Assembly (NCBI GenBank): GCA_038087875.1
Contig: CM075977.1
Location: 224,192,001 to 224,256,000 of the forward strand
From: Malacoraja senta
Lineage: Eukaryota
DNA length: 64,000 nucleotides
Direction: 5' to 3'
In this document: piece after piece, positions 18,760-50,899 of the stretch
Layout of the letters: every line of letters begins with the position of its first letter
Position numbering within the stretch: the first letter of the stretch is position 1
Notes under the pieces: generated by a model
What the model saw: the letters and a program-made list of their open reading frames with translations, nothing else
Databases searched by the model: none
What the model was told of the DNA's origin: nothing
Translations under genes and position numbers: made by a program

Positions 18760-20440
18760 AAACCATAGACATGCTCACTGCAGATTGCAGGGATAGCACC
18801 AAATAAGCTGTATTTTCCTCATAAGGAGATGGGAAGTAGTTGTTTTATGCTAATATTACATATGTTTCGGCACGGATGACTGACGTCTTGAAGTTCAGGT
18901 TATATGGGTTTTGACAAATATTAAGTTAAAGTGCCATTTATTGTGCCGAACGTGCCTTCTCATCATATTGGCTGCGGGGAGCAGAATCCACTATGTCGGG
19001 TCTCGCTCTCTGATATCTAAATTATGAAGGGTATCTTCAAACTCAAAACCTCCCAGGCCCAGGTACGCAGAAATATGGGATGTTAACATTGTGCTAACGC
19101 CGCTTTGCCGGTGGGATCCAGTTACATCCCTGTTCTTGGTCAAACTCACTTACAAAGTGGTTATGCTCATGGCGCTGAGTCCAGTGCAACGGGTCCAGTT
19201 ATTGCATAAGCTAGGGACTGGACAGGATGATTATATCTGCAAGCAAAATAACATTTTATGGTTATGTCTTAGTCAAGCAGAATAGACCAGGGGCATCAGG
19301 TCTTAAACTAGACTTGTTGGCATATCCCTTGGACCTTCGGTTGTTTGTGGTCACACATCTATACCAGTATGTTAAGGTCACTAAGAGCTTAAATACAATA
19401 CAATACAATTTATTTGTCATTTGGACGACGTTGAGGTCCAAACGAAATGTCGTTTCTGCAGCCATACATTACAAAACGAAGAAGACCCGAGACACAACAC
19501 AATTTACACATACATCCATCACAGCGCTGTGATGGAAGGCAAAAATAACGTATCTCTCCACTGCACTCCCCCCCCCCCCCCCGATGTCAGAGTCAAAGTC
19601 AAAGCCCCCGGCGGGCGATGGTGATTGTCCCGCGGCCATTAAAGCCACGTCGGGTAATGCAAGGTCGCGCACCGGGTCTTGGTGTTAGAGCCCCGGCTTG
19701 CGCTCGCAAAGTCCCGCGGCCATTCCAAGCTGCGCGAGGCGACGATGCAAAGCCCCGCTCCAGGTGCTCTTCAACCCCGCAACTCGGGCGGGATAAGTCG
19801 CCGCTGCGGAAGCCCCGAAAAGTGGTCTCCCACCAGGGACCCGCAGGCTTCCGGTGTTGCCGTCCGCCAGACCCGCAGTTGTAGCCTCCGAATCTCCGGG
19901 GGTCGGGTCGCAGCAGCGCTCCACCACAGCTCCACCCGCTCCGGACTCGGCCAGCCCCGCGACGGTGAGTAGTCCGCAGCTCCACGGGAGCCCCAGGTCG
20001 TTCCTGCTGGAGGCCGCTCCACGTTGCCCAGCCCCAACGACAACGGAGACCCGACAAAGAAAAGGTCGGGTCTCCCGTGCAGGGGAAAGATTTCAAAGTC
20101 CCCCCCCCACCCCCACACACATACCCCGACAAAAAAAATAATAAAAACTACATAGAAACGAGACAAAAATAATAAAAAGACAGACGGACTGCAGAGACTC
20201 TTAACTAGCAATATTTGTTAGTTACATAAAGCCTCATCAGTAGGTATCACTACAGACCATCTCCAGGTGGTTAACGGGTTCTGGCTTATACAGGAGTGAA
20301 CACCGACATTTTTAAGTCTCACTCCACCAGGGCTGCAACAACATCAGCAGCAGGGTTATGGACGTTTCGTGGGACCACATCCTAGCGGCTGCAGGATGGT
20401 CAAACGAACAATCTTCCAAACATTTTAGAACTAACCCATT
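18760..20440 (+). pseudogene. DIRS tyrosine recombinase remnant, interrupted by the insertion at 19393-20200
   Basis: MKGIF, PRYAEIWDV, KLTYKVVMLMAL...QRVQ, LVKQNRPG, TISRW, KSHSTRAA (H-x-x-R) and ILAAAGWS. Confidence 0.85.
19393..20200 (-). mobile_element. Non-autonomous GC-rich retroposon, copy A, with LINE-type 3' tail
   Basis: Interrupts the DIRS YR gene. The minus strand ends ATTTCGTT-hairpin-AATGACAAATAAA-(ATTGT)n. No recognisable protein. Confidence 0.8.
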
Positions 20441-30700: not shown

Positions 30701-31221
30701 AATTAGATTTCAAGTATCCATACTATTTTGTTTTCACTTGTTGATATTCAGATAGTTAGTGAATCAGTTGATTGCCCACTTAAACAAAAGCAGACCTTTT
30801 GGAAAAGATGGCCTAACAGACCACCACAAAGTCTTATAATGGAAGACAAATTTGCTGCAAGCAAGACAATTTTTATAGATTTACCTACCATACATTATCT
30901 ATAAATTCATGGCAGTCCCCTTTTATTTTCACCAATCTGGTTAATCTGAGATTTTACGCCTCCATTACCAACTTTGTATTTGGGGATGTGATACAAGCTG
31001 ACAATTCATAATGCAGTAGAATTCAAAGTATTTTCAGTATAAACTAAATTTAGCAAAAGCTTGTCAAAGCTTCTAGGATTTTGCAAGTCAGGGATGCCAC
31101 ATCACAAATATATTCACATCCAGCTCTGTTACAATTGCCTTTGAATCTTGAAAACTCGATTATCAAGCTTGCTTTGGAAGCATGCTTGTGGAAGCAAGAG
31201 TTCAAGAAAAGAGATGATTTA

Positions 31222-31446
31222 AGGGCCTGTCCCACTTGGCCGTCATTTGTGCGTCACGCAGATGACGCGCGAAGATTTTGTACATCACAAAATCCTGCGA
31301 CGTAGCGCGCGGCCACGCGTCACTGCCTATGTCATCGCGCACCATGCGCGCATCACGTGCATGTTACGACGCGCGGGTCGTGCGTGTGACGCGTAAATGA
31401 TGTTGCGTAAATTACGTGCAAATGATGGCCAAGTGGGACAGGCCCT
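31222..31446. mobile_element. Harbinger-derived MITE, 225 bp
   Basis: TIR AGGGCCTGTCCCACTTGGCCRTCATTTG with TTA TSD. Confidence 0.93.
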
Positions 31447-32850
31447 TTAGGAAACAATTTATCAAAACATAAACAAACGATCTGCTTTCTTGGCATCAAG
31501 TACAAAATCAAAATTATCCAGCTTGTTCAAACGTATATACCAACTCCTCAACTCAGGCCAATGATCTCAACTATTAAGCCAGAATTATTCAAATTTTCCC
31601 AGTTGACGTTGATTGGCCTGAGATGAATCAATTCAAACAAATTAAGGTCAGCTATGATTAGCAAATTAAGCTAAGTGATGTTCCCAAAGCTTGGAGCACT
31701 CATTTTTGATATTATTATCATCAACCCTACACGTGATATGGTAGAGTTACTCCTGTGCCCTGGTACTTGCTCTGAAGAAAATAAGCATGTTGAAATCTTC
31801 TCTTTGACAATCTGTTGCAAGACAATAAATTACCACTAAAGATCAGTAAAATAGATAATTGGAAGTGTGGAGGAATCAGGCCAATGTTCCTGATGGTTTC
31901 ATTGATCTCCTACCATACATTCACCAAGACACAAAGTGTGAAAGAAACCCCAGGAAATTCCACAGCATAGGCATCGTTAACTACAGTTCTCTTAAGTGCA
32001 TTATATGTTTTATTATATTGAAGTTACTATAAAATGCAAGCGATGTAGATAAATGAATTGTCTACCTAGATAAATTAATTGTGTAGGAAGGAACTGCAGG
32101 GGTTGGTTTAAACCGAAGATAGACACAAAATGCTGGAGTAACTCAGTGGGTCAGACAGCATCTCTGGAGAGAAGGAATGGGTGACGTTTCGGACCCGAAA
32201 ACGTAACACATTCCTTCTCTCCAGAGATGTTGCCTGTCCCGCTGAGTTACTCCAGCATGTTGACTCTGATTATCTTTTCACAGATGCTGCCTGACCTGGT
32301 GGGCAGGTTCAAAGTGTTCTGCTTTTTTAAATTAGATTTCAAGTATCCATACTATTTTGTTTTCACTTGTTGATATTCAGATAGTTAGTGAATCAGTTGA
32401 TTGCCCACTTAAACAAAAGCAGACCCTTTGGAAAAGATGGCCTAACAGACCACCACAAAGTATGATAATGGAAGACAAATTTGCTGCAAGCAAGACAATT
32501 TTTATAGATTTACCTACCATACATTATCTATAAATTCATGGCAGTCCCCTTTTATTTTCACCATTCTGGTTAATCTGAGATTTTACGCCTCCATTACCAA
32601 CTTTGTATTTGGGGATGTGATACAAGCTGACAATTCATAATGCAGTAGAATTCAAAGTATTTTCAGTATAAACTAAATTTAGCAAAAGCTTGTCAAAGCT
32701 TCTAGGATTTTGCAAGTCAGGGATGCCACATCACAAATATATTCACATCCAGCTCTGTTACAATTGCCTTTGAATCTTGAAAACTCGATTATCAAGCTTG
32801 CTTTGGAAGCATGCTTGTGGAAGCAAGAGTTCAAGAAAAGAGATGATTTA

Positions 32851-33075
32851 AGGGCCTGTCCCACTTGGCCGTCATTTGTGCGTCACGCAGATGACGCGCG
32901 AAGATTTTGTACATCACAAAATCCTGCGACGTAGCGCGCGGCCACGCGTCACTGCCTATGTCATCGCGCACCATGCGCGCATCACGTGCATGTTACAACG
33001 CGCGCGTCGTGCGTGTGACGCGTAAATGATGTTGCGTAAATTACGTGCAAATGATGGCCAAGTGGGACAGGCCCT
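32851..33075. mobile_element. Harbinger-derived MITE, second copy created by the tandem duplication
   Basis: Same element and same flanks as 31222-31446, offset by 1629 bp. Confidence 0.93.
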
Positions 33076-33810
33076 TTAGGAAACAATTTCTCAAAACATA
33101 AACAAACGATCTGCTTTCTTAGCATCAAGTACAAAATCAAAATTATCCAGCTTGTTCAAACTTATATACCAACTCCTCAACTCAGGCCAATGATCTCAAC
33201 TAATAAGCCAGAATTATTCAAATTTTCCCAGTTGACGTTGATTGGCCTGAGATGAATCAATTCAAACAAATTGAGGTGAGCTATGATTAGCAAATTAAGC
33301 TAAGTGATGTTCCCAAAGCTTGGAGCACTCATTTTTGATATTATTATCATCAACCCTACACGTGATATGGTAGAGTTACTCCTGTGCCCTGGTACTTGCT
33401 CTGAAGAAAATAAGCATGTTGAAATCTTCTCCTTGACAATCTGTTGCAAGACAATAAATTACCACTAAAGATCAGTAAAATAGATAATTGGAAGTGTGGA
33501 GGAATCAGGCCAATGTTCCTGATGGTTTCATTGATCTCCTACCATACATTCACCAAGACACAAAGTGTGAAAGAAACCCCAGGAAATTCCACAGCATATG
33601 CATCGTTAACTACAGTTCTCTTAAGTGCATTATATGTTTTATTATATTGAAGTTACTATAAAATGCAAGCGATGTAGATAAATGAATTGTCTACCTAGAT
33701 AAATTAATTGTGTAGGAAGGAACTGAAGTGTTGGTTTAAACCGAAAATAGACACAAAATGCTGGAGTAACTCAGTGGGACAGACAGCATCTCTGGAGAGA
33801 AGGAATGGGT

Positions 33811-33838: not shown

Positions 33839-34316
33839 ACTGAAAGTCATGGGAAAGGGAAACGAGATGCAAACAATCCAAGTTTCTCCAACCACTATCT
33901 GAATATGTATCATTCTCTGAATATATGATTATGTCTTTCAATTATATAGAATTAGTATGCATAGATTTGGGAGCAAGACATCATCAGCTGAAGCAAAAAG
34001 CTACATTTCTTCTGAAATAAACTCCACATTTTAAATACAAATTTAGTGAATCAAAAGATTTTTTGAAATATTTGAACTTTAGTTCATCAAGTATGTATGT
34101 AGCATATGTTTAAATAAATGCCCATACAATCCCCATTAGTGTATTATCCCAATTCTACCTTTGACAGTTAATAATATTTTTGTTCTGTTTTTGTAAGGTA
34201 AACGGATACATCTGAGAAAATGTAGATCTATTATCTGTAAACATAAGCACCAGTTGCATGGCTAAATGTACGAATCCTTAACAGAAAGAAAAATAAATAT
34301 TTTTATGTAATCCTAC

Positions 34317-34637
34317 CTGGAAGACCTTTTGCCCACTTCACGATTCGAACCATCTGTTTCTCAGCCAACCTGTTCAAACTGGACAACAGGTAATTGGTTG
34401 TGTCTGCTTGACTGCTGTCGTAAGATGCATAAACGACCTCAGGTTCAATGGCTTCGAGAATGGTGATCAGCGACGGGTTCACATGGGGTGGCATAAGTGA
34501 GAAATGGGGAACAAGAGTGGTGCTTCCACTTGGTTCTGGCAAAGTAGCAGTGAACATGATCCCTTCTTTAGGGCTGTGCGGAGGTTGCTGCTCTTCATGC
34601 AGCCCTTTCACCTTTCCCAGTTTCTTAGACTTCCGTG
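34317..34637 (-). CDS. NR3C2: Mineralocorticoid receptor hinge and LBD helices 1-3 (exon 5 equivalent)
   Basis: [17 protein letters not shown]...[44 protein letters not shown](G). The ARKSKKLGK and LNRLA motifs match MR rather than GR, PR or AR. Acceptor ccctcag, donor gtagga. 321 nt, phase 1-1. Confidence 0.96.
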
Positions 34638-34746
34638 CTGAGGGAAAAGAAAATAAATATATTTTGTTAGCATTTCGACTTTGACCGCAGAAACTGTACA
34701 TCTAAACTTCTGTGCATGTAGATTAAAAGTCAGTCCATTTTCATGT

Positions 34747-34963: not shown

Positions 34964-35678
34964 CAGTCCATTTCATGTTGATTTAGTATTTACAGACAGT
35001 ACACCAAACAGATCATTTATTATCTCTCTGAAATCTCTTACACCAAGAGATCTATTTGGAAACAGAGCAATTCAGGGCACATAACCACTGCTCTCTCACT
35101 TTCTCTCCAGCAGTCTTTCAGAGAGACACTTTGGGGTGTGGTAATAGTGAGGTCCATCAGAATGGGATGCACTGGGCAAACAAGAAAGTGAGCAACCAGA
35201 AATAATTTGTAGAAGGGAAGACCAGAGCATGATGGATGCTCTTCAAAACTACAACCTATTTCACAATGTCTCCTTGTAAAATAATGCTTATTGAACTGTG
35301 GGTGCCAGTGGCAACCTTTGATGGAATCCAGTGCCTCACAGAACATTGCTGGATCGGGTTGCCTACCAAAGATTTATATTTATCTTTGGGAAACACATTC
35401 CCCACTCAAATATTCCATCATCAGCCAATTACACAAAACCTGCCCTCACCCACTATGGAAAATCCAATACACCTCAACAGAATGGCTGCACATTGGTACT
35501 AATTATTAATCTGGTGCTCCCCTCCCCTTCTAAAGTAATATGGCATTCTTGATTCCCAGTATGTTCATAAGAAGTTTTGATTTACTTCTTATTTCAAAAA
35601 CTGCTTGGCCTATTTTCCCTTAAACTGCCTTATTCTTCCATCGTTTTTGATCTATCCCACCATCTAGTTTAGGTCTAA

Positions 35679-36373
35679 AGGGCCTGCCCACTTACGTGTC
35701 CTTGGCACGCAAATTACGCGACCTCGTCGTCGCGTTGAGGCGCATGGGCATCGTATGGCCGCACGGGGCCGGTCCCACTGAGAAGCGCGGAGGGGTATGT
35801 AGTTGTGCGCGATATCGCACGGCGCTCCGAAATTTTGTAGCGAACGAAATCTACACGTGCCAACGGCCTGTCGCGTAACTGACGGCCAAAGTGGGACAGG
35901 CCCAAGACCCTGGCGCAACGCAACGTCTCACCTCCAACAGCGGCAGAAGCAGGCAAACGATCGCCGAACTCGGCCTGGGGCTCATGGCCGTTGTGGATCC
36001 GGATCCGCCCCCAACTTCTACTCCCAGAGCGGGGCCAAGAAAATTGAAGATAGACACAAAATGCTGGAATAACTCAGCGGGACCGGCAGCATCTCTGAGA
36101 GAAGCAATGGGTGACGTTTCGGGTCAAGACCCTTCTTTCAGACTGAAGAAGAGTCTCGACACGAAACGTCACCCATTGCTTCTCTCCAGAGATGCTGCCG
36201 GTCCCGCTGAGTTACTCCTGCATTTTGTGTCCATCTTCAAATGACTTCACGCGCTCCAGACGGCTGTGCGGGCGCATGAAATCGCGCGCGACCTTCGCGG
36301 GACCGTCGCGCCTCAACGCGACCACGAGGTCGTGTAATTAGCGTGCCAAGGACACGTAAGTGGGACAGGGGCT
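35679..36373. mobile_element. Composite Harbinger MITE with ~70-bp TIRs
   Basis: TAA TSD. Left end nearly identical to 8994-9119. Extra internal right TIR at about 35888-35903. Carries a Penelope-derived palindrome at about 36044-36240. Confidence 0.9.
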
Positions 36374-36967
36374 TAAAGGTGTTCAGCAGATGGACATCAG
36401 TTCAGGCTCAACATTCGTAGGGCAAATTTCCATCCCAATGTTAGCCTCCCGAATTAATTTTATTCCGAAGCACATTCACACTTGAACATTGGGGCCTTGA
36501 GAGCTCTCTAGTGGGGGAAGTCTTGTCAAATATTCTTTGGTTATATGCAGAACAATAAAACAGATACATCTGACATGATTCACATTATAGTCACATACAG
36601 TCATTTCAGCAGAGAGGATTTACTTGATAAACCTAGAAATAGAAACACAGAAAACATGTACAAGAGTAGGCCATTCAGCCCTTCGAGCCCGCACCGCCAC
36701 TCAACATGATCATGGTTGATCATCGTAAATCAGTACCCCATTCCTGCTTTCTCCCCCATATCCTTGGATTCCGTTAGCCCTAAGAGCTATATCTAACACT
36801 CTCTTGAAAACTTCCAGTGAATTGGCCTCCACTGCCTCTGTGAAAAAGAAAAGGAAGTTTCAGTAGAGTGAAAACTTACGTTCCAAATCAGATGGCCATG
36901 TATAATAGTGGATCAAAGGGCAACTGGAAACGTAAGCAACTAAAATTGGCTCTGACTGTTGTGGGAG

Positions 36968-37432
<465 letters not shown>

Positions 37433-38982
37433 TTATGTAAAAAAATTCACAAAAATATTTCAGCAGAGATAAGGGATCTAACCAGTTTAAGTTTATAGTT
37501 CCAAGAATTCCATGGACATTCAATACAATACAAAAATACATATATATACCATGTGCAATATTGAAATATGCACCAAAAACAGAATACATAGAATTAAATA
37601 GACAATAGACAATAGGTGCAGGCCCTTCGAGCCAGCACCGCCATTCAATATGATCATGGCTGATCATCAACAATCAGTACCCCATTCCTGCCTTCTCCCC
37701 ATATCCCTGACTCCGCTATCTTAAGAGCCCTATCTAGCTCTCTCTTGAAAGTATCCAGAGAACCGGCCTCCACTGAGGCAGAGAATTCCACACTCACAAC
37801 TCTGTGTGTGAATATTTGAGAGGCATTGAATATTTGACAGGCGACCCCCGCATTACAGCTGTCCAGGTTATGGAGATTCATCCTTTCACAAATCACTGCT
37901 CAAAGATTTGAGATACAGACCAAAATTCGCTCTCGAGGAATTTATGTTAATTAATTAACACTTTTTTTTCCAATTTCCATCACGTCACATGCTCAGAATT
38001 AGGTTGGCTTGTCATTAAGGAAAATTGCAACATGTACCATTTTTTAAGAATGTAACTCCCCTTAATCCAAGGTCACCTTTATTGTGCACAACCAATATTG
38101 GATTCATCAAAGTGATTGATTGTATTGTTAGAGAATGGAATCTTTCCATTCCTTTACATATTTCCAGATTCAATTTCCAATTTCCTTATCAAATATTCCT
38201 TAGCCAGCTACAGAGCATGCAGATGATGGATGAGGCTTGCTCTCCGCTTTCAATGAATGAAACCTTTACTTTGTTTATACCCTCAAACTCTTTCCTTCTG
38301 CTATAGTTTAAATGAGACTGGATTGAAAAAAATGATCTTCAGGGGCTTGATAGAGTGGATGTGGAGTGGATGTTAGCTATTATGGGAGAATCCACAATGA
38401 AGGGTATCCACTGAAGACTAAGATGCGGTGAGCTTTTGGAATTCGCTTCTTCAAAGGACTGTGAGTCTTCGAATATTTTTAAAGTCAAGGTGGATAGATG
38501 CTAGATAGGAAAAGGGTCTATAAGTTACCTTGACTATGACCTTTAATGTGTAGTTGAGGTTACGGTCAGATCAGTCATGATATGATTGAGTACGTTGAAG
38601 GTGCCAACACATACTCTTCTTCCATATGTTAGTTTAGATGTTTGTACACAGTCAATGAGCAAAAAAACAGGTCTCCAATGCCTATAGCCTAATTTGGCAG
38701 CTGTATAGTAAATATGCAAAAATGAGGGAAACAGAGGTCACTTGATTACATTTTAATAGTGAGGGAACAATAGTGTGTCACCCTGATGCTTTTGTTTAAA
38801 GATCCTGTAAACATTCTCAAGTGTGCAGTTCCGAGAACAGTGTTGTCCGTTTTCCCTTACACTGATGTCCACTGTCAGTTTTAGTATGATTCACTCTGAA
38901 GTCAGCAGCTTCAAATTCCTGGGCGTTAACATCTCAGATTACCAGTCCTGGACCTCGCCATCCCTCTTCACCCTCCCTCTTC

Positions 38983-39971
38983 ATGGAAGTGGCGGCGCGG
39001 CACTGGCTGCAGCGGCTCGTCGGCAGTCCCGTTTGTTTGTGTTTTTTGTGTTGTTTATTTTGTTTTGGTTAGTCTAGTTTTGGTTTTTAGTTTGTGTTTT
39101 GGGGGGGGTGGGGGGGTTGTAACGGGGTTTGCAGTCTCTCCCTGCGGGGGAATGCGACTTTTTTGTCGTATTCCCCTTCTCTGCCTCCGTCTGCGTGAGG
39201 CCTAATGGAGCTGATGACCTCGAGGCTCCGGAGGCAGAGCCCGTCAGGACTCGCCCTGAGCTCGCTCCCGTGAGGGTGGTCCGGCTCAGGGCTGGAACAG
39301 TGCTCCCGTGAGAGGTTGTGGCGCTCTCGTGAGGGCGGCCAGCCCAAGGGTGCAATGAGGCTCCGTTGGAGTGGCCGAGCTCGGGGAGGTGCGGCGCTCG
39401 CAGCCCGAGGGAAGTTCGGCGCCCATGTCGGGGCGGCCCGGCCCGAGGGAGAAGCGATGCCCATGTCGGGGCGGCCCGGCCCCGAGGGAGGTTCGGCGCC
39501 CATGTCGGGGCGGCCCGGCCGGGGGGAGAAGCGACACCCATGTCGGGGCGGCCCGGCCCGGGGGGAGAGGCGACGCCCATGTCGGGGCGGCCCAGCCCGA
39601 GGCTGAAGATGGTACTCATGTGAGAGTGGCTGGGACGGTGTTCTGGCGGTGGTGGCCTGAGTCCGGGGATCGGCCGTGGGCCAGCGGCTGCGTTTGCAGG
39701 ACTGGTGGGCGGCAGCTTCGACCACCCCGGGCCGCGGTGTTTGAGCCGCGGGAAACATCGCCCGGGGGGTATCGCCTCAGCGCAGAGGGAGAAGAGGAGG
39801 GAAGAGACTGTAGACCTAAGACTTTGCCTCCATCACAGTGAGGAGATGTTGGGTGGATCACTGTGGGTGGATGTTCATGTGTGTTTATTGTGTGTTTATG
39901 TACTGACTGCTTCAATTTCGTTCAGACTTCGGTCTGAATGACAATAAAAGGCTATTCTATTCTATTCTATT
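38983..39971 (+). mobile_element. Non-autonomous GC-rich retroposon, copy B, with LINE-type 3' tail and internal ~39-bp tandem repeats
   Basis: Starts GGAAGTGGCGGCG. About five GCCCATGTCGGGGCGGCCCGGCCC units at about 39404-39602. Ends ATTTCGTT-hairpin-AATGACAATAAA-(CTATT)n. Confidence 0.8.
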
Positions 39972-40420
39972 CCCCTCTCCCCCTCCCCTCCCCCACTCCT
40001 CCCTCACCGCTCCTTCCCACTCCTATCCCCTACCCTCAGTCACTCCTCTCTCCCATAACCCATCTCCCTCCCTACCCTCCTGTCCCCCACTCTATCTCCC
40101 TGCTCCCCCACTCCTCACCTCTATCCAACTCCCACCTCACCTCCCCACTGCCCTCCTCTTCCTCTACCCCCCCTCCTCCCCCACTCCACCCCATCTCCCC
40201 TTCCTACCCCCTCCTCTCCTTCTATCCTCCTGCTCCCCCACTCCTCACCTTCCCCTATCCCACTCCCCCACACTCCTCCTCACCTCCTCCACTGCTCTCC
40301 TCTCCCACTATCCCCCACTCCCTACCTCCCCCACACCCCCTCCTCTCTTTCTATCCCCCTCCCTCCCCCACTCTCCCTCCTCACCTCCCCCACTCCTCAC
40401 CTCCCTATCCTACCCCACCC
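39972..40420. repeat. C/T-rich low-complexity tract
   Basis: Degenerate CCCCACTCCTC units; purine-poor plus strand. Confidence 0.9.
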
Positions 40421-40423
40421 CAC

Positions 40424-41009
40424 AATAAAAACAGTGATGTTTTTTGTAAATGAAACCTATCCCCTATCACACCCCCTCACGCCCCCTAACAATGAAAACC
40501 GTTTGTTTTTTTGTAAATCAAACCTCCCCCCAAAATTTGATTAAAACAGATTTTTTTTAAAAATAGCAATTTTTTATGTAAATGAGATTCGGGATCCCAT
40601 TGTGATGTCATAAGCTGCTAACGGGCAGTGCAAGTGGAACTGATTTTTGTCAAAGTGGTTTATGTAAAGTTTAAAATGTGAATAACTTGTAAAATATACC
40701 ATAAATCTGAACGAAACTTGCCACAACGCACCACAGGACAATAGTGAGTAAGATGGGCCCAAAACTAGCACTATCGTGTACGTTTTGGCGTAGTATCGGG
40801 ATCACACACATACAAACAAACAAGATGAGAGTTTTAGTAATATACTAGACCAAGTGCAGACCCACTGGGTCTGTTCCTCCCAACGCAGGGTGGGGGGGAG
40901 GGGTGGTTGCTGCGGCTTCACACGCACACTAACCACCCCCCCACACACCAAGGGGGGTTAGGGGGTAGGGGGAGACAGGGTGGGCGAGGGGAGGGATGGG
41001 AGACTGCTG
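40424..41009 (-). mobile_element. Non-autonomous Helitron-like element, head-to-tail junction
   Basis: Minus strand: hairpin CAGACCC-AGT-GGGTCTG (40857-40873), 8 nt, then CTAG (40845-40848), followed directly by a TATATTACTAAAAC 5'-type end. Confidence 0.65.
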
Positions 41010-41209
41010 NNNNNNNNNNNNNNNNNNNNNNNNNNNNNNNNNNNNNNNNNNNNNNNNNNNNNNNNNNNNNNNNNNNNNNNNNNNNNNNNNNNNNNNNNNN
41101 NNNNNNNNNNNNNNNNNNNNNNNNNNNNNNNNNNNNNNNNNNNNNNNNNNNNNNNNNNNNNNNNNNNNNNNNNNNNNNNNNNNNNNNNNNNNNNNNNNNN
41201 NNNNNNNNN
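41010..41209. other. Assembly gap (200 N)
   Basis: Fixed-length N run inside NR3C2 intron 3. Confidence 0.99.
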
Positions 41210-42284
41210 GGCCATTCGGCCCATCAGGTCTACTCCACCATTCAATCATGGCTGGTCTATCTCTCCCTCCTAACCCCATTCTCCTGCCTTCTCCCCATAA
41301 CCCCTGACACCTGTCAGATGAGTTATGGTCACTCATCCCCAAAAGATCATTTACTACACTTCCTATTACACAAAGCCTTATGTACCTTAACTTGTTCTAC
41401 GGTTGTGTTCACAGCCTATTGCACTAGTAAAATGTCTCATTATACAAACTCAATATCATCTTTGCCACTTTAAATTGCTCAATCTATGAGAAAATTAAAG
41501 TCTTTTGTAATTATTGCATTATGTATATTTTAAATTATCTTTATTTTTTAACACTGCTCAACAATATAGTTACTCTTAAAAGACCTATTATCAACCTCTG
41601 CCAATGATTTATTTATTTTCTACTTAACTTTTTCATTTTCCCAAGAAAGGTCACTATTCTGTTATCCTTAAGATAGGTCTACCCTACTTCCCTTTTCATT
41701 CTACTTATTTTTCTAACTGTCATGAATGCAGAATGTGTGGCAGGCTCAAACACAACAGCTTTGGTCTTCCTGAGCTGAATCAGAAGATATTATGAGTCTA
41801 TTTGCCTCTGCCACCCAGGCAGCCTGCATTGCCATCATGGTTATGTGGTTGAGCAAACCGGTGGAGTAACACAGGTGTTGCCAGCTCAAATAACCAGAGA
41901 AGGAAAACACATATTGAGCTTAAAAGCTGAGTATCATGTTGTGAAAGTCAACAACAAAACGAAATATTAAAGCAGCTCCAGTGTCTACCCTAAAATCCCT
42001 CTGAAGGTTCAAATTTGCAGGAATCATTCCCTGAAAATTAATCCCCCTCAGTTGGGGTAAATTCATCATAAAGTAGCATTAATCTGTTGCACTCTATTTT
42101 AAAAAATAATTCAATGGACAATCAAACAAATGAATTGGCTGTGTCCCAACTTCTGTCCACTCAAGTGCATTCATCACCATTCACACGTTGGCCTCAGTGA
42201 CAGGGTACTAATGTCTGATCTGGTCATTGCCACAGTGCTGAAAGTTACATTTTACCCCAGTTTAATGTATATTATGTTGTTAAT

Positions 42285-42969: not shown

Positions 42970-45935
42970 TATATGGAGGCTTCAGAAAGGATGCAGAGGA
43001 GGTTTACGAAAACAATGCCTGTATTAGGGGACATTAGCTACAGCCAGAGGTTGTCAGGCATTGCTTTTTTTCTCTCGAATGCTGGAACGAGGCGAGACCT
43101 AATAGAAATATATACAATTATGCGAGGCATAGAGAAGACAGATAGTCAGAACCTTTGGAAATACCAAATTCTAGAGGGGCAAAGTTTAAAGGAGATATCC
43201 AGGGCATGTTTTTTTGTGAGACCCTGGAACACACTGTCAGGGGTGATGATGGAGGCAGGTATGATAGTGGTATTTAAGAGACTTTTGGATAGGCACATAG
43301 ACATGCAGGGAATGGAGGGATATGGTTTAGGTGTACGCAGAGACGTTGTGGGCCAATGGATCTGTTCCTGTGCTGTACTCTACTCCGTTCTAATTTACTT
43401 ATCTGGAGTACCTGGCATTGTGCTGGTAGAACCTTGTTGTCCTGGGAACACTTGCAGGACAACCAGGTCCAAATACTTGTAGAAACAAGGAACTGCAGAA
43501 GCTGGTTTACAAAACCCCCCCACAAAGAGCTGGATTAACTCATTGAGTCAGGCAGCATCTCTGGAGAACATGGATAGCTGACATTTTCAGTTGGGACCCT
43601 TCTTCAACTTTGTACACTTACATTGCCCCAAAAGGTATGATGCATGGAGAATTTCCTCACCCTGCATGTCTCTGATGTATCATTGTGTCCGGCAAACCTG
43701 GCAGTACACACCACATTCTCACCATATGGAAAACTACCCAGAAATTAGTGCTGCCATATTTAACAGCAGAAAAGCAACCGACCTTCAGTTGCACACCATT
43801 GAAAACAAATAGCATTATGCTATTGAATTTCTTGACAGCTGGTGCTTTGCCCACCGGTGATGAATATATGTGCATATATTCAAATTTAAATTAAGTTTCT
43901 CAGAAGTACAGCAGATGATTTTTAAAAAATCAAAAAACATATTATTTTCCAATTTGTAATGTTAATTAGTACAAACAATCGATTAAGATGCATGGGACTC
44001 ATGGTGATTTTGGTAGTTTACCCTCAGAAGACATAGTTGGGATGGAAGGGTGTTATACTGGCAAGATATAGGTGATCAGTGGTGTTCCTCAGGGATCAGT
44101 GCTCTGACCTCTGTTGATTGTGATATGTATAAACAACTTGGACGGAAATGTAAATGAGTTAGTTTGTAAGTTTGCAAACAACACAAAATTGTTGCAGATA
44201 ATGAAGCAGCCTGCCAAAGGGCACAGCAGGTTATAATCAGTACCAAATATGGGCAGAGAAATAGCAGATGGTCATTGGTGAGACAAGCCGTTGGTGAGAC
44301 CTCAAATGGAGCACTGTGCACAGTTCCGGTTCCCTGCGATAGGAGGAATGTCATTAAGCTTGAAAGGGTGTCGAAAAAGTTCATGAAGTTGTTACTGGGA
44401 CTGGAGTGCTTGAGTTATAAGGAGAGGCTGGATAGCCTGGGACTTTTTTTATCGGGAGCTTTGGAGGCTGAGGAGTGATTTTATAGAAATATATAAAATT
44501 ATGAGGGGTGCAAATAAGCTGGATGATAATAGTTTTTTTTCTCCAGGGTAGGGGAGACTGAAACTAGCGGACATAGATTTAAATTGGAAGGAGAAAGATT
44601 TAAAAGAGACCTAAGGCACAATGTTTTCACATGGAGGGTAGAGGCCATATGGATGAGCTGCCAGAGAAAGCTGTAGAGACTTGCAAAATCAGAATGGTTA
44701 AAAGGCATTTGGATATGACTACAAAAGGTAGAAATTGATGGGCAGACTGTTGAAGAAATTGCTGTACTTCCTATCCACATTCCCATCTATCCCATAAAGT
44801 CAAGCATTATTCCAGGCCCCACAGGATGACAGGTACCTGGGATATTACAATGTTGTATAAAACCATTACTGACTGTGATGCTGTGAATAAAAAATAACAC
44901 CCCCCTTAATTACATTTAGATTTTTAAGTCTGTCTAAGATTCCCAAAGTGAACAAACCAACGTTGTTATTCAGTTAGAATAAACTGCACTGGATGAATTT
45001 TTTTTCCGACGTTTTGATGTCTGGCTTTTGATGTAAATATCAAGGCCACAGAATAATTCTCAGCATTTTTTTGTGGTTTAAAATGGGCTTTCATAAGAGC
45101 AAGCAATGACGGTGCAGCCATGTGTTTTGGTGTACATCTGTGCAGCATCACAAGAGATAAAGCAAAGGGAAATTTTACATCCGTCCATGCCCTACCAGTG
45201 ATGAGTTAAGCAATCCTTTAGAATTATCAGTACCACTGGAATCAGATGCACAAGTCACATAAACACTTGCCGATATAATTCTCATCTAGGGCCACCTAGA
45301 CATTGGCCAAGAAAACATCACAGGCAAAAAAAATAATTCTACAACTGGAGAACATGCAGTATATGCATAAATCACACGGAGTCTGCGTACCAGTTTCTTT
45401 TTGTGAAATAGACTATACACGGATGACTATCAGGAATGAGATTACCACAAAATCAGCAAGGAAATATTCTCAATTGGATAACTTAGTACAGGCAGGATCA
45501 TACTTCACCATGAATAACTAAAGAAACAAACACTTGCTTTGATAAAGCTTAATAACAACTAAGAAGGAAACATTAGGCTCATATGTAGTTGGCAGTTTTC
45601 TTTATTTTATGTTTTATGGTACCATATGGAAACAGATGGTGGACGGTCAGTTTCCTTAGCTCCACCACCAAGTCCCCTACTCCTCCTTCCCCTCCGACAA
45701 CCCTTCAGAAAGCCCTCCACCAATGATGCTGGCCAAGAAAAGGAATTGAAATGCAGTTTAAAATTTGGCAGTCCTTGAGCTCACGTGCTGGTTTCTCTGA
45801 GAGCAACAATGTAACTGGTGCAAAGTCAAGCTCAGAAATGAAAAGGTTTATTGAACTGCTTTTAGCATTGAAGTGAACATCTGAAAGAGTGGTGAATGCC
45901 AGTAGGGAAAGGCCTACACATGGTTTAAACATTGG

Positions 45936-46246
45936 GTGGCACTTTGGCGCAACGGCAGAGCTACTGCCTTACAACGCTGGAGACCTGGGTTCGATCCTGA
46001 CTACAGGTGCTGTCTGTACGGAGTTTGTACGTTGTCCCCGTGACGTGCGTGGGTTTCCTCCGAGATCTTCGGTTTCCTCCCACACTCCAAAGATGTACAG
46101 GTTTGTAGGTTAATTGGCTTGATATAATTGTAAATTGTCCCGAGTGTGTGTAAGATAGTGTTAATATGCGGGCATCGCTGGCTGGTGCAGACTCGGTGGG
46201 CCGAAAAAACGTGCTGTATCTCTAAACTAAACTAAACTAAACTAAA
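45936..46246 (+). mobile_element. tRNA-derived SINE, same family
   Basis: GGTTCGATCC B box, conserved body and (AAACT)n tail. Confidence 0.88.
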
Positions 46247-46906
46247 CACAGCTTTCACATAATTTATTTTCTTTCATTTGCTATTTGGGTAAATGAGCAA
46301 GTGACCATCTGTACAATCTGTTCACATGATGCCAAAATAAATCATTACAAACACTGGACAAGCGAAGATTTTCCATCTTGTTACCAAATACATTAACACA
46401 TTGACTGGCTAAAAACATCGGTTGAAGGGTAAGATAATCAATTAAGTGAAATTGATGAAGGCTTCCAAAGAAATGTACAACATCATACTGGGAACTGACC
46501 ACCTTGGGCCACACTTTGAAGGAACAAAAAAAATCAGCAGCGATGAAGTATAAACAAGGTTAACACCAAATTGCTTTTTTGTTGTAAAATTAATCCTTAA
46601 TTCCCCCACAGCAGAGAGCATCCAGACAACTCTACAGGAAAGCACAGCTGCTTATCCTGATTGTGTATTAATTGCAGTATTGTACTATTCACCAAGTACC
46701 GATAAATTATATCGATACAATAATGTCTGAAGAAGAATCTCGACCACGTCACCTGGAATACCTGCTGTTACTCCAGGACTTTGTGTCCCTTTGCTGATCA
46801 ATAATTAGATATGCAGGTCAGACAGAAGCAGCAGCTGATGAGGTTAAATGAAAAACAATCAGACTATAAAAGAGATGATCCCAGAGGGAGTAAAAGAGAT
46901 GATTAC

Positions 46907-47055: not shown

Positions 47056-48469
47056 CTGAAACAGATGACATTTTCCAACTTTAGAAATATGGTATGAATC
47101 TCTTTTTTTAATGGACTTTAACAATCAAGGTGCTCATACATGCTGTTCAAGGTGAATACTGCACAAAATAAAACATGACTATTTCAGATCATAAGAAGAA
47201 TCCATCAATACATTTCATATTGTAATACACTGTAATACACACTTTATATAAAACTTTCACGACAGTTCAGCTTCATGATTCATTAATCTCCTGGTTTACT
47301 TTAGGAGATTTTGTACCCACTACACTACAGTCATTCCATCAAAGTTCACCTTTGCCAATTGGAGTCAAATGGGTTCTATCTTTTAGACTATGTTCAAGTA
47401 GGGGGAATCATACAATAGCAGTTCAGACATTTATACTTCTGAAATCACCTGCATCAAATAACCTTGCAGCAGCGTAGCTTCTCATATATTAGTGCCATTT
47501 AAAAAAATAACCTGTTATTCTTCCATGGCTGTACGTGTTTGTCACAGTACAAGGGACCTTTTAATATTTCTTACATGGGGAATGTTCTCAGATGTCTAAA
47601 TAGTGCAAAATAAAATAGTGTCTTGCAGGCTCAGGAATCTCTGATCAACTCTGAATAAGTGCTAAGATTGCTTTTCTTGTTGGAAATATTATTTATTCAC
47701 CTTGATTTGTTCTTATCTTTTCTACAGTTTACCTTAATGATGCTCAAATTACCTAGTGCACAGGCATCTCAGCTCTATACGGAAACTTTGCTGTCCACTG
47801 GTGAATCCCAGAACACAGAAAGCTGGCCAGAAAGACTAACCCAAAATGAGATTAAATTACCACAGTAACCACTGTTAAAAATGCAGGAGCAAACCTTTGT
47901 TTGAAAGGCTTCCTTTGGAACCACCAGCTAGTTAGTTTAGTTTATTGTCACATGTACTGAGGTACATTGAAAAGCTTTTTTGTTGCATGCTATCCAGTCA
48001 GCGAAAAGACTATACATGATTACAGTCAAGCTGCCCACAGTGTGCGGACACAGGCTAAAGGGTATAACGTTTAATGCAAGATAAAAAGTCAGTATAGTCC
48101 AATTAAAGATAGCTCGAAGGTCCCCAATGTGGTAGATGGGTGGTCAAGGACCGCTCTTTAGTCGGTGGGAGGACTTTTCAGTTGTTTGATAACAGCTGGG
48201 CAGAAACTGACCCTGATTTGTACCAGTGTCATTTCTGAGGTGATATGCAGTGCAGAGAAAGGTTTGAGAATACAATACACTTCCATAATCACATTAGGAC
48301 AAATCTTCCTGGCTGTGACTGGTGGTTCCACAGCAGCCATTTTAACAGCAAGACTAATTTAAGCACTAGTGCATAGTGTTTTGAAGAAGATACAAAACAT
48401 ACATACAACATACAGACATACTTACAAGATGAGACCTTTATAGATATATAGATAGATTGACAAGTACTT

Positions 48470-48785: not shown

Positions 48786-50899
48786 CAGGAATTGGTACAG
48801 ATAAGTACTTAATTATCAGTATGGACATGGTGGGCCAAAGGACCCACCTGTGTGACTCGATAACTCTATGAACCCTACAATTTCCTCAGTCTTCTCAGAC
48901 ATGGCAGAAATAAGTAAACTTAAATAAGTCATTACAGTTAGAATGGATTTTATTTAAGGTTTCATTTGATCAAGATATTTTTACCAACTGTTACCTTAAA
49001 TGAACCTTTGAGGCAATCATAATAAAATTGAAAATGTTTTAACTTGAAATTATTGTGCAACTCTGCCCTGCCCCACATTCTGGCAAAGGTCTGTGGGTGT
49101 ACATTTTTCAAGTTGTTTGAAAATTTCTGCTTAGTTCCATTTTCTCTAAATAAAGAATCAAACAATAGAGCGAGTGAAATCATGAAATCTCAAGTATCAA
49201 GTGATCTCTTTTTTTTAAATCTCTACCTCAATAAGTAAATCTTGCGCTTTCATACATGCATTACATCTCTGGAACCACAGCAAAAGAATCTTGAAACATA
49301 TGTAGAAGACATGAAAACGAATGGAAAAATATCATAGCAAGGAGCAGCTGGAAAATAGGCAGACAAAGACCGGCAGGAATACATCAATACTGAAGCAGCT
49401 TAGGTGGTAGAAATGTGATGTGGGTCTGCTGTAATCACAAAGAACTACTGTGCCCCATTAATTATTCTCAAATGTTATTAACTTAAGAGTCCAGGAGGCA
49501 GCAAACAGATTTCCACTCATTTGTATTGAAGAAAGGGAGGTCATTTTCCACAAACCTCCATAGCAGCATTAAAGTTAAGGTTTGGTCTCCTGCCTAGTAC
49601 TGGCTTGCTATAATGTTTTATCATTGTCTGCTGGATTCAGCTTAGTCCATTTACAAACACAAAACAAGTGACTAGTATAATCAACTGGTGCCTCTGAAGT
49701 CAAAGATAATCCAGAAATTATTAAAGCAACAAGTTAAGCTATTTTTTCCTAGTGAACAGTAAAAATGTAATGGTTTATTTTACCATTTTCTCAAACTGGC
49801 ATTCTTCCACAGACATGTTGAGCGTTCACCGTTTTTTTACTGAACGAGCTACAACTCACAATGCTTCTATTTTCTGTTGAGAACAGCTGTGCCTTTGCAA
49901 CTACACTGCAAGGCCTGTGAGGAAGAGCTACATATGGCTGGTAAACCTTCACATCTAAGACACAAGGGGTGAAGAATTTAGTAGCTATCTTCTTTAAAGT
50001 CCCACGATGTTTTGGGGAAAAAAAGATATATAAACATAATGGGTTATGAATAACAATATGCATTATCTTGCCACTATACTGTTATAAAGTGGTCAAACAG
50101 AACACCAGTAGCCACTAAAGTGATGGTATTTTATTGTGACACGCACCTGTGCTTTGGAGTTTTATAATAGGTAACCTGGTTGCAGAATCTTTGGATCAAA
50201 GCCGACCAGATGGTTGAGCAGACTCATAAGGTCAGAGAGTTACATGCCTAACATTTAAACAATTTACGAATGGCCAGACTGGGAATTAAAAATCGAAATC
50301 CCAATTTCAAATGCTTCATAAATTCCTTTTCAAGATTAGACAATTTAAAAAAGGGGGAGGGTGGGGAGAGTGAAAATATCTGATGCAATAGCAGCCCTTG
50401 ATAGGCTGCAGATGGCAATTATAGAATTACACCACCCAATTAGTTGGCAAATGTGGGAATCAACATGATTACAGTAAACTCTCTTTATAATAGACTATGG
50501 AGGGGAAATGGTGTCCGTTATTGCCGATTGTCCACAGAAACAGAGTAACTGAGTAATAGAAACAAAGAACTGCAGATTCTGGTTAATACACAAAAGGACA
50601 CAAAGTGCTGGAGTAACTCAGCGGGTCAGGCAGCATCTCTGTAGAGTGTGGATAGGTGACGTTTCAGCTCGAGACCCTTCTTCAGACTCTCAGTCTGAAA
50701 CTGGGCCTGGAATCCAGGTGAGTCGACGGCCCCGGCCTGCTGGTGGCTGGGGGGAGATGTGAGATGTGAGATGTGAGGATCAGCGGAGTCACTGATCGTG
50801 ACCTGGAAGCGGCCGAGGAAGCTGTGTGGACCGGTGCTAGCGGCAGTAGGCAGTAGGGAGGCCTGGAAGCAGCTGTATAGTATGCAGTCACACCATACT

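What the first reader, a model, noticed from the sequence alone, without database searches (positions are those of the whole stretch)
38983..39971. Divergent non-coding retroposon pair with three covarying hairpins: candidate structured-RNA element family
Seen: copy B (38983-39971, plus) and copy A (19393-20200, minus) have dissimilar GC-rich interiors but the same layout: GCAGTCC-GT, a T-rich tract, a G-run, CCCTGC, then three hairpins. Hairpin 1 is GGAGACCCGAC-T-rich-GTCGGGTCTCC in A and GGGGAATGCGAC-T6-GTCGTATTCCCC in B. Hairpin 2 is TCCATCACAG..CTGTGATGGA in A and TCCATCACAGTGA..TCACTGTGGGTGGA in B. Hairpin 3 sits between ATTTCG and TGACAA(A)TAAA: TTTGGAC..GTCCAAA in A and TTCAGAC-TTCG-GTCTGAA in B (a cUUCGg tetraloop). 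Both end in a pentamer tail. Stem sequences differ but pairing is kept. No Pol III A/B boxes or protein homology are evident. Inference: a non-autonomous ~1-kb retroposon class whose RNA structure is under selection, probably mobilised by a Rex/Babar-type LINE whose tail (hairpin plus TGACAATAAA, about 47935-47980, minus) has the same design.
Basis: partly seen in the sequence, partly recalled or inferred. Interest (0 to 1): 0.75.

Follow-up and report, generated by a model that had tools for sequence, protein, structure and literature searches.

The report
Abundant non-coding LINE-dependent skate retroposons
Two GC-rich, protein-less jumping-gene copies of about 0.8 and 1 kb in introns of a skate gene belong to a very abundant family that most likely borrows a LINE's copying enzyme through an RNA hairpin and short-repeat tail; this is a familiar kind of genomic parasite in a less usual form.

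Summary
Copy A (19393-20199, minus) and copy B (38988-39971, plus) share only their ends: about 160 nt at the 5' end (64% identity) and about 245 nt at the 3' end (61%). The landmarks fall in the same order, and all three hairpins fold as described. Pairing is kept through double changes in hairpin 1 (3 pairs) and hairpin 3 (2 pairs).

B is not half of a "pair". Thousands of contigs from two skate species lie on it along its whole length, and first-stage readers flagged the same kind of element at least 20 times elsewhere in this genome.

Neither copy has a coding frame, a Pfam or Rfam match, a ribozyme or a Pol III head. Both are CpG-rich, and B carries a 38/77-bp VNTR.

My best reading is a Pol III-less, LINE-dependent non-autonomous retroposon superfamily. 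Its 3' hairpin, AAUAAA and pentamer tail form the usual "stringent" recognition module of CR1-group LINEs.

A model of that module finds the window's LINE tail (47940-47975) as its best non-self hit, but only marginally (E about 0.16). The partner LINE is therefore not identified.

Interest is moderate to low.

The parts
38988..39971 (+). Copy B, whole element (984 nt).
   Evidence: Family contigs begin at 38988-38990 and depth ends near 39955, at the tail. CT-rich low-complexity DNA lies on both sides, which marks this as one insertion unit.
38988..39022 (+). GC-rich 5' leader of B, absent from A
   Evidence: This stretch is covered at family depth, 5-8e4 summed word depth. In the same place A has only AGTCTCT before GCAGTCC.
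39023..39145 (+). Shared 5' layout in B: GCAGTCCCGT (39023-39032), a T/G-rich tract, G-runs (39101-39117) and TCTCTCCCTGC (39135-39145)
   Evidence: It aligns to A at 64% identity, 110 of 172 positions.
39146..39177 (+). Hairpin 1 of B: a 13-bp stem with a U6 loop
   Evidence: -23.7 kcal/mol, z -6.8. It is kept in the minimum-energy and centroid folds of the 213-nt 5' module.
39403..39602 (+). GC-rich VNTR, period 38/77 bp, about 5 copies, inside the unique interior (39178-39744)
   Evidence: TRF. Contigs show joints that skip or repeat units (table 5).
39745..39769 (+). Conserved block GCCGCGGGA..CATCGCCCGGGGGG, which opens the shared 3' module
   Evidence: Start of the 3' blastn alignment. 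It lies in the region of highest family depth.
39829..39871 (+). Hairpin 2 of B: TCCATCACAGTGA..TCACTGTGGGTGGA, with a bulged G and a U.G pair
   Evidence: z -1.2. Most family contigs lack one G at 39865, and loose-end consensus sequences read TCCACCACAGTGAG..CTCACTGTGGTGGA, a perfect 14-bp stem.
39918..39941 (+). Hairpin 3 of B: a 10-bp stem with a UUCG loop
   Evidence: -13.8 kcal/mol, z -4.9. All 10 pairs are standard pairs.
39937..39972 (+). AATGACAATAAAA (AATAAA at 39943-39948) followed by the (CTATT)4.2 tail
19393..20199 (-). Copy A, whole element (807 nt)
   Evidence: A candidate 5-bp target-site duplication, TTAAG, lies at 20200-20204 and 19388-19392.
20079..20192 (-). Shared 5' layout in A: GCAGTCCGT (20184-20192), a T-rich tract, G-runs (20100-20127) and TCTTTCCCCTGC (20079-20090)
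20045..20075 (-). Hairpin 1 of A: an 11-bp stem with a 9-nt U-rich loop
   Evidence: -24.4 kcal/mol, z -5.5. It is kept in the fold of the 179-nt module.
19605..19636 (-). Conserved block GCCGCGGGA..CATCGCCCGCCGGGGG in A, followed by a G15 run at 19568-19582
19515..19536 (-). Hairpin 2 of A: the perfect palindrome TCCATCACAGC/GCTGTGATGGA
   Evidence: z -3.4
19417..19445 (-). Hairpin 3 of A: a 10-bp stem with a 9-nt loop
   Evidence: z -2.3. One search shows 10 of 10 pairs, two of them changed on both sides relative to B.
19393..19421 (-). AATGACAAATAAA followed by the (ATTGT)n tail
47938..48175 (-). 3' UTR of a LINE copy, ending in a weak hairpin, TGACAATAAA and a CTAAA-type tail. It serves as a comparator and possible relative of the partner LINE.
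   Evidence: It is the best non-self hit of the hairpin-3 model (18.1 bits, E about 0.16). Its UTR is homologous to the UTR after the ORF2 remnant at 50880-51065 (z 9.4).

Best explanation
A and B are copies from two deeply diverged subfamilies of one abundant superfamily of non-coding, non-autonomous retroposons in skates. Each unit is 0.8-1 kb.

The unit has four parts:
- a conserved 5' module with a T/G-rich tract, G-runs, a pyrimidine motif and a very stable hairpin;
- a fast-evolving, CpG-rich interior that can hold a VNTR;
- a conserved 3' module with a GC block, hairpin 2, a GU-rich spacer and hairpin 3;
- AAUGACAAUAAA and a pentamer microsatellite tail.

Inferred mechanism: the element is transcribed by Pol II rather than Pol III, because it has T-runs, no A or B boxes, an AAUAAA signal and a CpG-island-like body. 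Hairpin 3 and the repeat tail are then bound in trans by the reverse transcriptase of a 'stringent-type' CR1-group LINE (L2- or Rex1-like). The RNA is copied into the genome by target-primed reverse transcription, mostly at full length.

The hairpins persist because only master copies that keep them go on multiplying. That is selection on the parasite, not on a host function. Hairpins 1 and 2 are probably further cis elements for RNP assembly, RNA stability or promoter activity.

Shown here: the shared architecture, the lack of coding capacity, the high copy number of B, the hairpins and the compensated differences. Inferred: the polymerase, the partner LINE and the roles of hairpins 1 and 2.
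For: - Only the ends are homologous, and they are collinear.
- All three hairpins fold in both copies.
- Hairpin 3 has 10 of 10 pairs in both copies, with 2 double changes.
- Hairpin 1 has 3 double changes and one inserted pair, read from the folds.
- At one position of hairpin 2, A has U-A, the B-family consensus has C-G and B itself has U.G.
- 4069 and 5541 contigs from two species lie on B along its whole length. Summed depth is 1e4-8e5, and the 5' end is about as deep as the 3' end.
- Twenty runs from 4 organism labels and 8 studies hold its 31-mers.
- There are no ORF relatives, no Pfam, Rfam or tRNA matches, and no A box.
- Microsatellite tails are present.
- CpG observed/expected is 0.99 in A and 0.86 in B, against 0.47 for the window.
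- The covariance model of hairpin 3 picks the LINE tail at 47940-47975 as its best non-self hit.
- The literature describes stringent 3' stem-loops with compensatory changes and repeat tails (PMC3747384). Rex1 has a conserved 3' UTR followed by oligonucleotide repeats (PMC6274825). CR1-group LINEs make up 22-34% of elasmobranch genomes (PMC13343379).
Against: - Only two full sequences were available, so no family-level covariation statistic exists.
- The shuffle control on hairpin 3 is uninformative with two rows (110 of 500).
- The 5' and 3' modules as wholes do not fold significantly better than shuffles.
- No partner LINE with the same tail was found. The window's LINE has a different tail unit and no significant plain sequence similarity.
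- Target-site duplications are weak: 5 bp for A and ambiguous for B.
- The copy number of A's subfamily was not measured.
- Transcription is not shown, because the 'RNA?' runs are only guessed to be RNA.
Confidence: 0.7

Rival explanations
1. A and B are deletion derivatives of autonomous CR1-group LINEs, made of LINE 5' UTR joined to 3' UTR. Alternatively they are 5'-truncated copies of a LINE with a 3' UTR of about 1 kb, the truncation falling at a hot spot such as the G-run or U-tract. On this reading they are 'simple LINE UTR fragments' with no separate identity.
For: - The skate genome is dominated by recently expanded LINEs (PMC10115646).
- Chondrichthyan L2 and Rex1 elements lack ORF1, and some ORF1-less elements carry tandem subunits near the 5' UTR (PMC13343379). 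That recalls B's VNTR.
- The 3' end has LINE design.
- Depth on B cannot distinguish the two readings, because contigs can only be laid on B itself.
Against: - Two very diverged subfamilies start at the same homologous landmark, within about 35 nt. Random truncation would not do this.
- No ORF2 C-terminal remnant lies upstream of either copy.
- The 5' end of B is about as deep as its 3' end in family contigs, which is a SINE-like profile rather than a LINE-like one.
- Contigs show variants that join hairpin 1 directly to the 3' module (39193 to 39768), which points to a modular short element.
- The window's LINE 3' UTRs are only about 230 nt long and are unlike A and B.
Confidence: 0.2
2. The hairpins are not RNA elements under selection. 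They would be DNA palindromes kept perfect by intrastrand template switching or gene conversion, or promoter or transcription-factor sites, or chance features of two lineages.
For: - Hairpin 2 of A is a perfect 22-nt palindrome.
- Whole-module fold z-scores are not significant.
- With two sequences the shuffle control cannot separate structure from chance.
Against: - Three hairpins sit at homologous positions in copies whose neighbouring sequence is only about 62% identical.
- Five pairs are changed on both sides and none is broken in hairpins 1 and 3. A simple count puts the chance of this near 1e-6.
- Hairpin 3 lies exactly where stringent LINEs and SINEs carry their recognition stem (PMC3747384).
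Confidence: 0.07
3. The elements are retro-copies or paralogues of a host structured non-coding RNA gene, or carry a self-cleaving ribozyme that defines the 5' end. Other short retroposons noted in this genome are read that way.
For: Earlier notes of this scan report HDV-like ribozymes at the heads of SINEs in this genome (s1-140058, s1-184352; unverified leads).
Against: - Rfam finds nothing at the gathering threshold in the window.
- With E up to 10 on A and B it returns only noise, and no HDV-like, hammerhead or other self-cleaving ribozyme family among the hits.
- The interiors of A and B are unrelated.
- The very high copy number points to a transposable element.
Confidence: 0.03

Closest known systems
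UnaSINE1 / UnaL2 (eel) and other 'stringent-type' SINE/LINE pairs, including HE1 SINE / HER1 LINE of sharks and rays (PMC3747384)
   Same: A non-autonomous element ends in a conserved stem-loop next to short tandem repeats (TGTAA in UnaL2). The partner LINE's reverse transcriptase recognises this module. Stems vary through compensatory changes.
   Different: Those SINEs are under about 400 bp and have a tRNA-derived Pol III head. A and B are 0.8-1 kb and have no A box, B box or tRNA part. They have T-runs that would stop Pol III and carry an AAUAAA signal. No partner LINE with an identical tail was identified here.
SVA and related composite retroposons of hominoids
   Same: Non-coding, Pol II-type, about 1 kb or more, with a GC/CpG-rich body and a VNTR (B). 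They are mobilised in trans by a LINE, mostly as full-length copies.
   Different: SVA uses L1 and a poly(A) tail ('relaxed' recognition) and is built from Alu and HERV pieces. A and B use a hairpin with a microsatellite tail. A has no detectable VNTR. There is no sequence relation.
Sadhu elements of Arabidopsis (PMC2848041) and 'SINE-like' elements with a head of unknown origin listed in Table 1 of PMC3747384
   Same: Non-autonomous, non-coding retroposons without a recognisable small-RNA head, split into deeply diverged subfamilies and mobilised by LINEs. My recollection, not checked in the paper, is that Sadhu elements are about 0.9 kb.
   Different: Different kingdom and partner clade. Sadhu is moderate in copy number, whereas the B family is extremely abundant.
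Rex1/Babar and L2 LINEs (CR1 group)
   Same: A conserved terminal 3' UTR followed by oligonucleotide repeats of variable unit and length (PMC6274825). These LINEs are dominant in elasmobranch genomes (PMC13343379).
   Different: A and B encode no endonuclease or reverse transcriptase. The clade of the window's LINE remnants was not determined here.

Membership tests
Classical SINE (Pol III-transcribed) | Head derived from tRNA, 5S or 7SL RNA, with internal A and B boxes | tested here: not met
   ARAGORN finds no tRNA-like sequence in the window. No A-box match lies in A or B. The only B-box-like match has one mismatch and lies inside B's VNTR at 39490. T5-T8 runs lie in the 5' part.
Classical SINE (Pol III-transcribed) | Length of roughly 100-600 bp | tested here: not met
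   A is 807 nt and B is 984 nt.
Stringent-type LINE-dependent non-autonomous retroposon | A stem-loop directly upstream of the 3' terminal repeats, kept through compensatory changes | tested here: met
   Hairpin 3 folds in both copies. All 10 pairs form in both, and 2 pairs are changed on both sides.
Stringent-type LINE-dependent non-autonomous retroposon | A 3' tail of short tandem repeats rather than poly(A) | tested here: met
   (ATTGT)n in A and (CTATT)n in B.
Stringent-type LINE-dependent non-autonomous retroposon | The 3' end is shared with an identified autonomous partner LINE | tested here: inconclusive
   The model of hairpin 3 hits the LINE tail at 47940-47975 as its best non-self match, but at 18.1 bits and E about 0.16. 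Local alignment is not significant for B (z 0.7) and marginal for A (z 2.4). The tail units differ. More skate DNA could not be fetched.
Stringent-type LINE-dependent non-autonomous retroposon | Dispersed in many copies with differing flanks | tested here: met
   This is met for B: thousands of contigs in two species, with similarity ending at 38988.
Stringent-type LINE-dependent non-autonomous retroposon | Target-site duplication or other insertion signature | tested here: inconclusive
   A is flanked by TTAAG, only 5 bp. B lies inside CT-rich low-complexity DNA that continues on both sides, so its duplication is ambiguous.
Autonomous CR1-group LINE (L2/Rex1/CR1) | An ORF2 with AP endonuclease and reverse transcriptase domains | tested here: not met
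   The ORFs in A and B are GC-rich artefacts on both strands with no Pfam hit and no relatives in the word search.
SVA-like composite retroposon | An internal GC-rich VNTR | tested here: inconclusive
   Present in B (38/77-bp units) with copy-number variants in contigs. No internal repeat was detected in A.
SVA-like composite retroposon | Poly(A) tail and L1-type mobilisation | tested here: not met
   The tails are pentamer repeats after AATAAA, not poly(A).
Ribozyme-headed retroposon (HDV-like, hammerhead) | A recognisable self-cleaving ribozyme fold at or near the 5' end | tested here: not met
   There are no Rfam matches at the gathering threshold. With E up to 10 only unrelated weak hits appear.

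The most novel reading that the evidence does not exclude
Skates harbour a previously uncharacterised class of Pol II-type, SVA-like modular retroposons. A conserved structured 5' head and a 3' hairpin core are combined with interchangeable LINE tails, so that the elements can exploit several CR1-group LINE lineages at once. The class would have reached perhaps 1e4-1e5 copies and would scatter CpG-island-like sequence through the genome. This would make it a major shaper of elasmobranch genome and methylation landscapes, outside the tRNA, 5S and 7SL SINE paradigm.
Probability: 0.3. Interest if true: 0.55.

Novelty: new variant of a known kind. Interest (0 to 1): 0.35.

Why it matters
If the family is as abundant as the contig data suggest, it is one of the main repeats of skate genomes. 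It would also be a clear case of a long LINE parasite without a Pol III head that relies on 'stringent' hairpin-and-tail recognition, a combination mostly known from short tRNA-derived SINEs.

Its CpG-rich, G-run-bearing bodies inside introns could affect methylation, transcription and assembly quality. The diverged subfamilies with compensated stems would give a natural data set for mapping which RNA features a CR1-group reverse transcriptase reads.

It is not a new principle. The 3' module is textbook LINE/SINE biology, and the element may already sit unnamed in automated repeat libraries.

Tried and rejected
- **Known RNA families or ribozymes.** Rfam at the gathering threshold on the whole window gave nothing. 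E up to 10 on both copies gave only noise.
- **Coding capacity.** The ORF lists show only GC-rich frames on both strands. The word-based protein search of the 223-aa ORF of B found nothing, and Pfam on eight ORFs found nothing.
- **More copies in the window.** Sensitive blastn of the six modules found none. Motif searches found none beyond A and B.
- **More copies elsewhere.** A degenerate pattern for hairpin 3 and its tail found 0 matches in metagenome contigs. Searching this scan's findings by sequence came back blank.
- **Sampling skate DNA through TE proteins.** The LINE RT fragment found no candidates. No further skate loci, no full-length LINE and no family alignment could be obtained.
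- **The large representative protein search.** I did not run it.
- **Global MAFFT alignments of A and B.** These misplace the hairpins. Only the hairpin-3 alignment was usable. Hairpin-1 pair counts are therefore manual.
- **Other GC-rich islands in the window** (15140-16350, 25200-25650, 35660-36380). They are different elements.
- The N gap (200 N within about 41000-41220) was left untouched.
Full report
**Setting**

The window is skate DNA. It holds part of NR3C2 on the minus strand: the ligand-binding-domain exon is readable in ORF 34303-34701, and a first-stage note on this window (s1-213425) names the gene. Copy A (minus) is therefore sense-oriented and copy B (plus) antisense. Both appear to be intronic, judged from their positions around the readable exon and from the absence of any coding frame in them. 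The rest of the window is the usual mix of LINE, SINE, Penelope-like and DNA-transposon debris.

Yes. Reading both copies shows the same order of landmarks:
- GCAGTCC(C)GT;
- a T/G-rich tract of about 70-80 nt;
- G-runs;
- TCTYTCCC(C)TGC;
- a very stable hairpin;
- a GC-rich interior;
- a GCCGCGGGA..CATCGCCCG..GGGGG block;
- hairpin 2;
- a GU-rich spacer;
- ATTTCG, then hairpin 3, then AATGACAA(A)TAAA;
- a pentamer repeat.

Sensitive blastn finds only two collinear similarities between the copies. One covers about 160 nt at the 5' end (64% identity, E 2e-8). The other covers about 245 nt at the 3' end (61%, E 5e-8). The interiors do not align, and nothing else in the 64 kb resembles either module.

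Folding confirms the hairpins:

| Hairpin | Copy | Energy (kcal/mol) | z-score | Note |
|---|---|---|---|---|
| 1 | A | -24.4 | -5.5 | |
| 1 | B | -23.7 | -6.8 | |
| 2 | A | -14.2 | -3.4 | perfect 22-nt palindrome |
| 2 | B | -18.1 | -1.2 | bulged G and a U.G pair |
| 3 | A | -11.9 | -2.3 | |
| 3 | B | -13.8 | -4.9 | C(UUCG)G loop |

TRF confirms the tails, (AATAC)3.6 on the plus strand for A and (CTATT)4.2 for B.

**Compensated differences**

On a clean alignment of hairpin 3, all 10 pairs form in both copies. Two adjacent pairs differ on both sides: U-A against C-G, and G-C against A-U. Sliding the partner strand drops pairing to 47% or less. With two rows the shuffle control says nothing (110 of 500).

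MAFFT could not align hairpin 1, so I compared the folded stems by hand. Eight pairs are identical, three are changed on both sides (A-U to G-C, C-G to A-U, C-G to U-A), and B has one extra G.U pair. No pair is broken.

Most of hairpin 2's stem is conserved in sequence. At its one variable position A has U-A. B has U.G. The B-family consensus, recovered from contig loose ends, has C-G in a perfect 14-bp stem, and most contigs lack B's extra G at 39865.

A simple combinatorial estimate puts five exactly compensated pairs and no broken ones in hairpins 1 and 3 at roughly 1e-6 under independent change. That figure is my inference, not a tool statistic. The modules taken whole do not fold better than shuffles (z -0.5 to -2.5). 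The evidence is therefore for local stems, not for a large global fold.

**It is a big family, not a pair**

The 31-mers of B occur in 20 runs from four organism labels and eight studies. I laid contigs of two DNA runs from different species on B at 80% likeness or more. They placed 4069 and 5541 contigs along the entire element.

Summed word depth was 1e4-8e5, against 20-50 in the upstream flank. Similarity starts at 38988-38990 and ends at the tail. Three points follow:
- The roughly 35 nt before GCAGTCC in B belong to the element.
- The 5' end is about as deep as the 3' end, which is a SINE-like profile rather than a LINE-like one.
- Joints show VNTR length variants, and also a form joining hairpin 1 directly to the 3' module (39193 to 39768). 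The element is therefore modular.

Depth is not a copy number, but hundreds of distinct contigs per 100 nt imply at least thousands of copies. Many positions where B differs from the family majority are T or A where the family has C or G, as expected from CpG decay.

Two small runs guessed to be RNA also hold most of the element. This does not prove transcription.

First-stage readers flagged similar 'GC-rich non-coding retroposons' of about 750-900 nt with differing LINE tails at least 20 times elsewhere in this genome. None of the notes shown in these look-ups carried a follow-up. I treat them as leads only.

**What it is not**

- *Not coding.* The ORFs are GC-rich frames open on both strands, and they differ between A and B. 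They have no Pfam hit and no relative in the word search.
- *Not a Pol III SINE.* There is no tRNA-like part and no A box. The only B-box-like match has one mismatch and lies in B's VNTR. T5-T8 runs lie in the 5' part.
- *Not a known RNA family or ribozyme*. I checked this because earlier notes report HDV-like heads on SINEs in this genome.

Both copies are CpG-island-like. CpG observed/expected is 0.99 in A and 0.86 in B, against 0.47 for the window. Interior GC is 68% in A and 72% in B.

**Relation to LINEs**

The window holds remnants of a LINE on the minus strand. Reading the sequence, an ORF2 tail lies at 51065-51788, with motifs such as FKF(L/P)..., KKAHQCLYFL and ...FKNSFPAIIRSMN. A second copy's 3' UTR at 47938-48175 ends in a weak hairpin, TGACAATAAA and a CTAAA-type tail. 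The two UTRs are homologous (z 9.4).

Plain local alignment of the 3' modules of A and B to this UTR is not significant for B (z 0.7) and marginal for A (z 2.4). I then built a covariance model from the hairpin-3 alignment of A and B and searched all 64 kb with filters off. Its best non-self hit is exactly that LINE tail (47940-47975, 18.1 bits, rough E 0.16).

Its tail unit differs, and a tRNA-type SINE at about 45935-46247 carries the matching (CTAAA)5 tail instead. I did not test whether the LINE is Rex1/Babar or L2.

**How it most likely works**

The 3' hairpin next to a short-repeat tail is the standard recognition module of 'stringent' LINEs and their SINEs. Its stems are known to drift through compensatory changes, and its repeats support template slippage (PMC3747384). 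Rex1 is described as having a conserved 3' UTR followed by oligonucleotide repeats (PMC6274825). CR1-group LINEs make up 22-34% of elasmobranch genomes (PMC13343379), and LINE expansion dominates the little skate assembly (PMC10115646).

I therefore read A and B as non-autonomous parasites of such LINEs. They would be transcribed by Pol II, given the AAUAAA signal, the T-runs and the CpG-rich body. A LINE reverse transcriptase would capture them in trans through hairpin 3 and the tail, and they would insert by target-primed reverse transcription.

A is flanked by a 5-bp TTAAG repeat. B sits inside CT-rich low-complexity DNA that continues on both sides.

Hairpins 1 and 2 and the T-tract/G-run head are conserved cis features of unknown role. 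RNP assembly, RNA stability, possible G-quadruplex formation and promoter function are all candidates. Selection here acts on the element's own propagation.

**Rivals**

The main one is that these are LINE UTR derivatives, either 5' UTR fused to 3' UTR or truncated copies of a LINE with a long 3' UTR. Some ORF1-less CR1-group LINEs carry tandem subunits near the 5' UTR (PMC13343379), which recalls B's VNTR.

Three things argue against simple truncation: the shared 5' landmark in two very diverged subfamilies, the absence of ORF2 remnants upstream and the even depth profile.

An origin as a 5'UTR+3'UTR derivative cannot be excluded without full-length skate LINEs. A pattern scan of metagenome contigs found nothing.

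**Verdict**

The retroposon family and the kept stems stand. Family-level covariation, the partner LINE and any ribozyme activity do not.
- The 3' module is well-known biology.
- The long body without a Pol III head, the structured 5' head and the apparent abundance make this a variant worth describing, not a new principle.
- It may already exist unnamed in automated repeat libraries, which I could not check.

Noticed in passing
window 15140-16350 (+): Another GC-rich (about 59%) segment. It has an NRF1-like GCGCATGCGC and a CACGTG near its start, a possible splice donor and acceptor (ctgaagGTAAGT ... ttgtagGA), internal repeats of about 60 bp (15330-15560), and an end reading ...GCCCATGACAAATAA. 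It is unrelated in sequence to A and B. It could be a different retroposon or a promoter with a first exon.
   Followed up: no
window 35660-36380: An element with terminal inverted repeats of about 70 nt (CTAAAGGGCCTGCCCACTTACGTGTCCTTGGCACGC...). It carries a nested, nearly perfect palindrome of about 200 nt (36030-36240). It looks like a MITE inserted into a MITE or DNA transposon.
   Followed up: no
window about 30500-33800: Motif hits recur at offsets of 1628-1629 bp (for example 30922/32551, 31820/33449, 31165/32794 and 30510/32139/33767). This indicates a tandem duplication of about 1.63 kb in two to three copies.
   Followed up: no
window 45935-46247 (+) and 47938-48175 (-): A tRNA-type SINE with a B box at 45988 ends in (CTAAA)5. 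A nearby LINE 3' UTR has the same tail unit. This is a likely classical SINE/LINE pair in the same window.
   Followed up: partly
window 55959-56285 (-): A 108-aa ORF with a CxxC...YIGET...H pattern that, from memory, is typical of the GIY-YIG endonuclease of Penelope-like elements. It was not checked against Pfam.
   Followed up: no
window 11605-13559 (-): A PIF/Harbinger transposase remnant. The 130-aa ORF matches DDE_Tnp_4 (E 2e-18). The 193-aa ORF is 70% identical to an annotated protein of the skate Rhinoraja longicauda.
   Followed up: partly
window 38864-38960 (+): A short LINE reverse-transcriptase fragment (..SSFKFLGVNISDYQSW..) lies directly upstream of B. It is itself a high-copy piece, with depth 7e4 at 38906-47. 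It is not contiguous with B.
   Followed up: partly
window 39972-40423 (+), also 38955-38982: A CT-rich low-complexity array of about 450 nt (periods 53-150) into which B inserted. The reads tool skipped 39943-40010 as a repeat.
   Followed up: no
window 58400-59850 (+): A 5'-truncated LINE of another type (RT motifs VYLDFQKAFDKVPH...; C-terminus GRPFRTEMR...) that ends in (ATTGTCT)4. It shows that several LINE tail types coexist in this locus.
   Followed up: no
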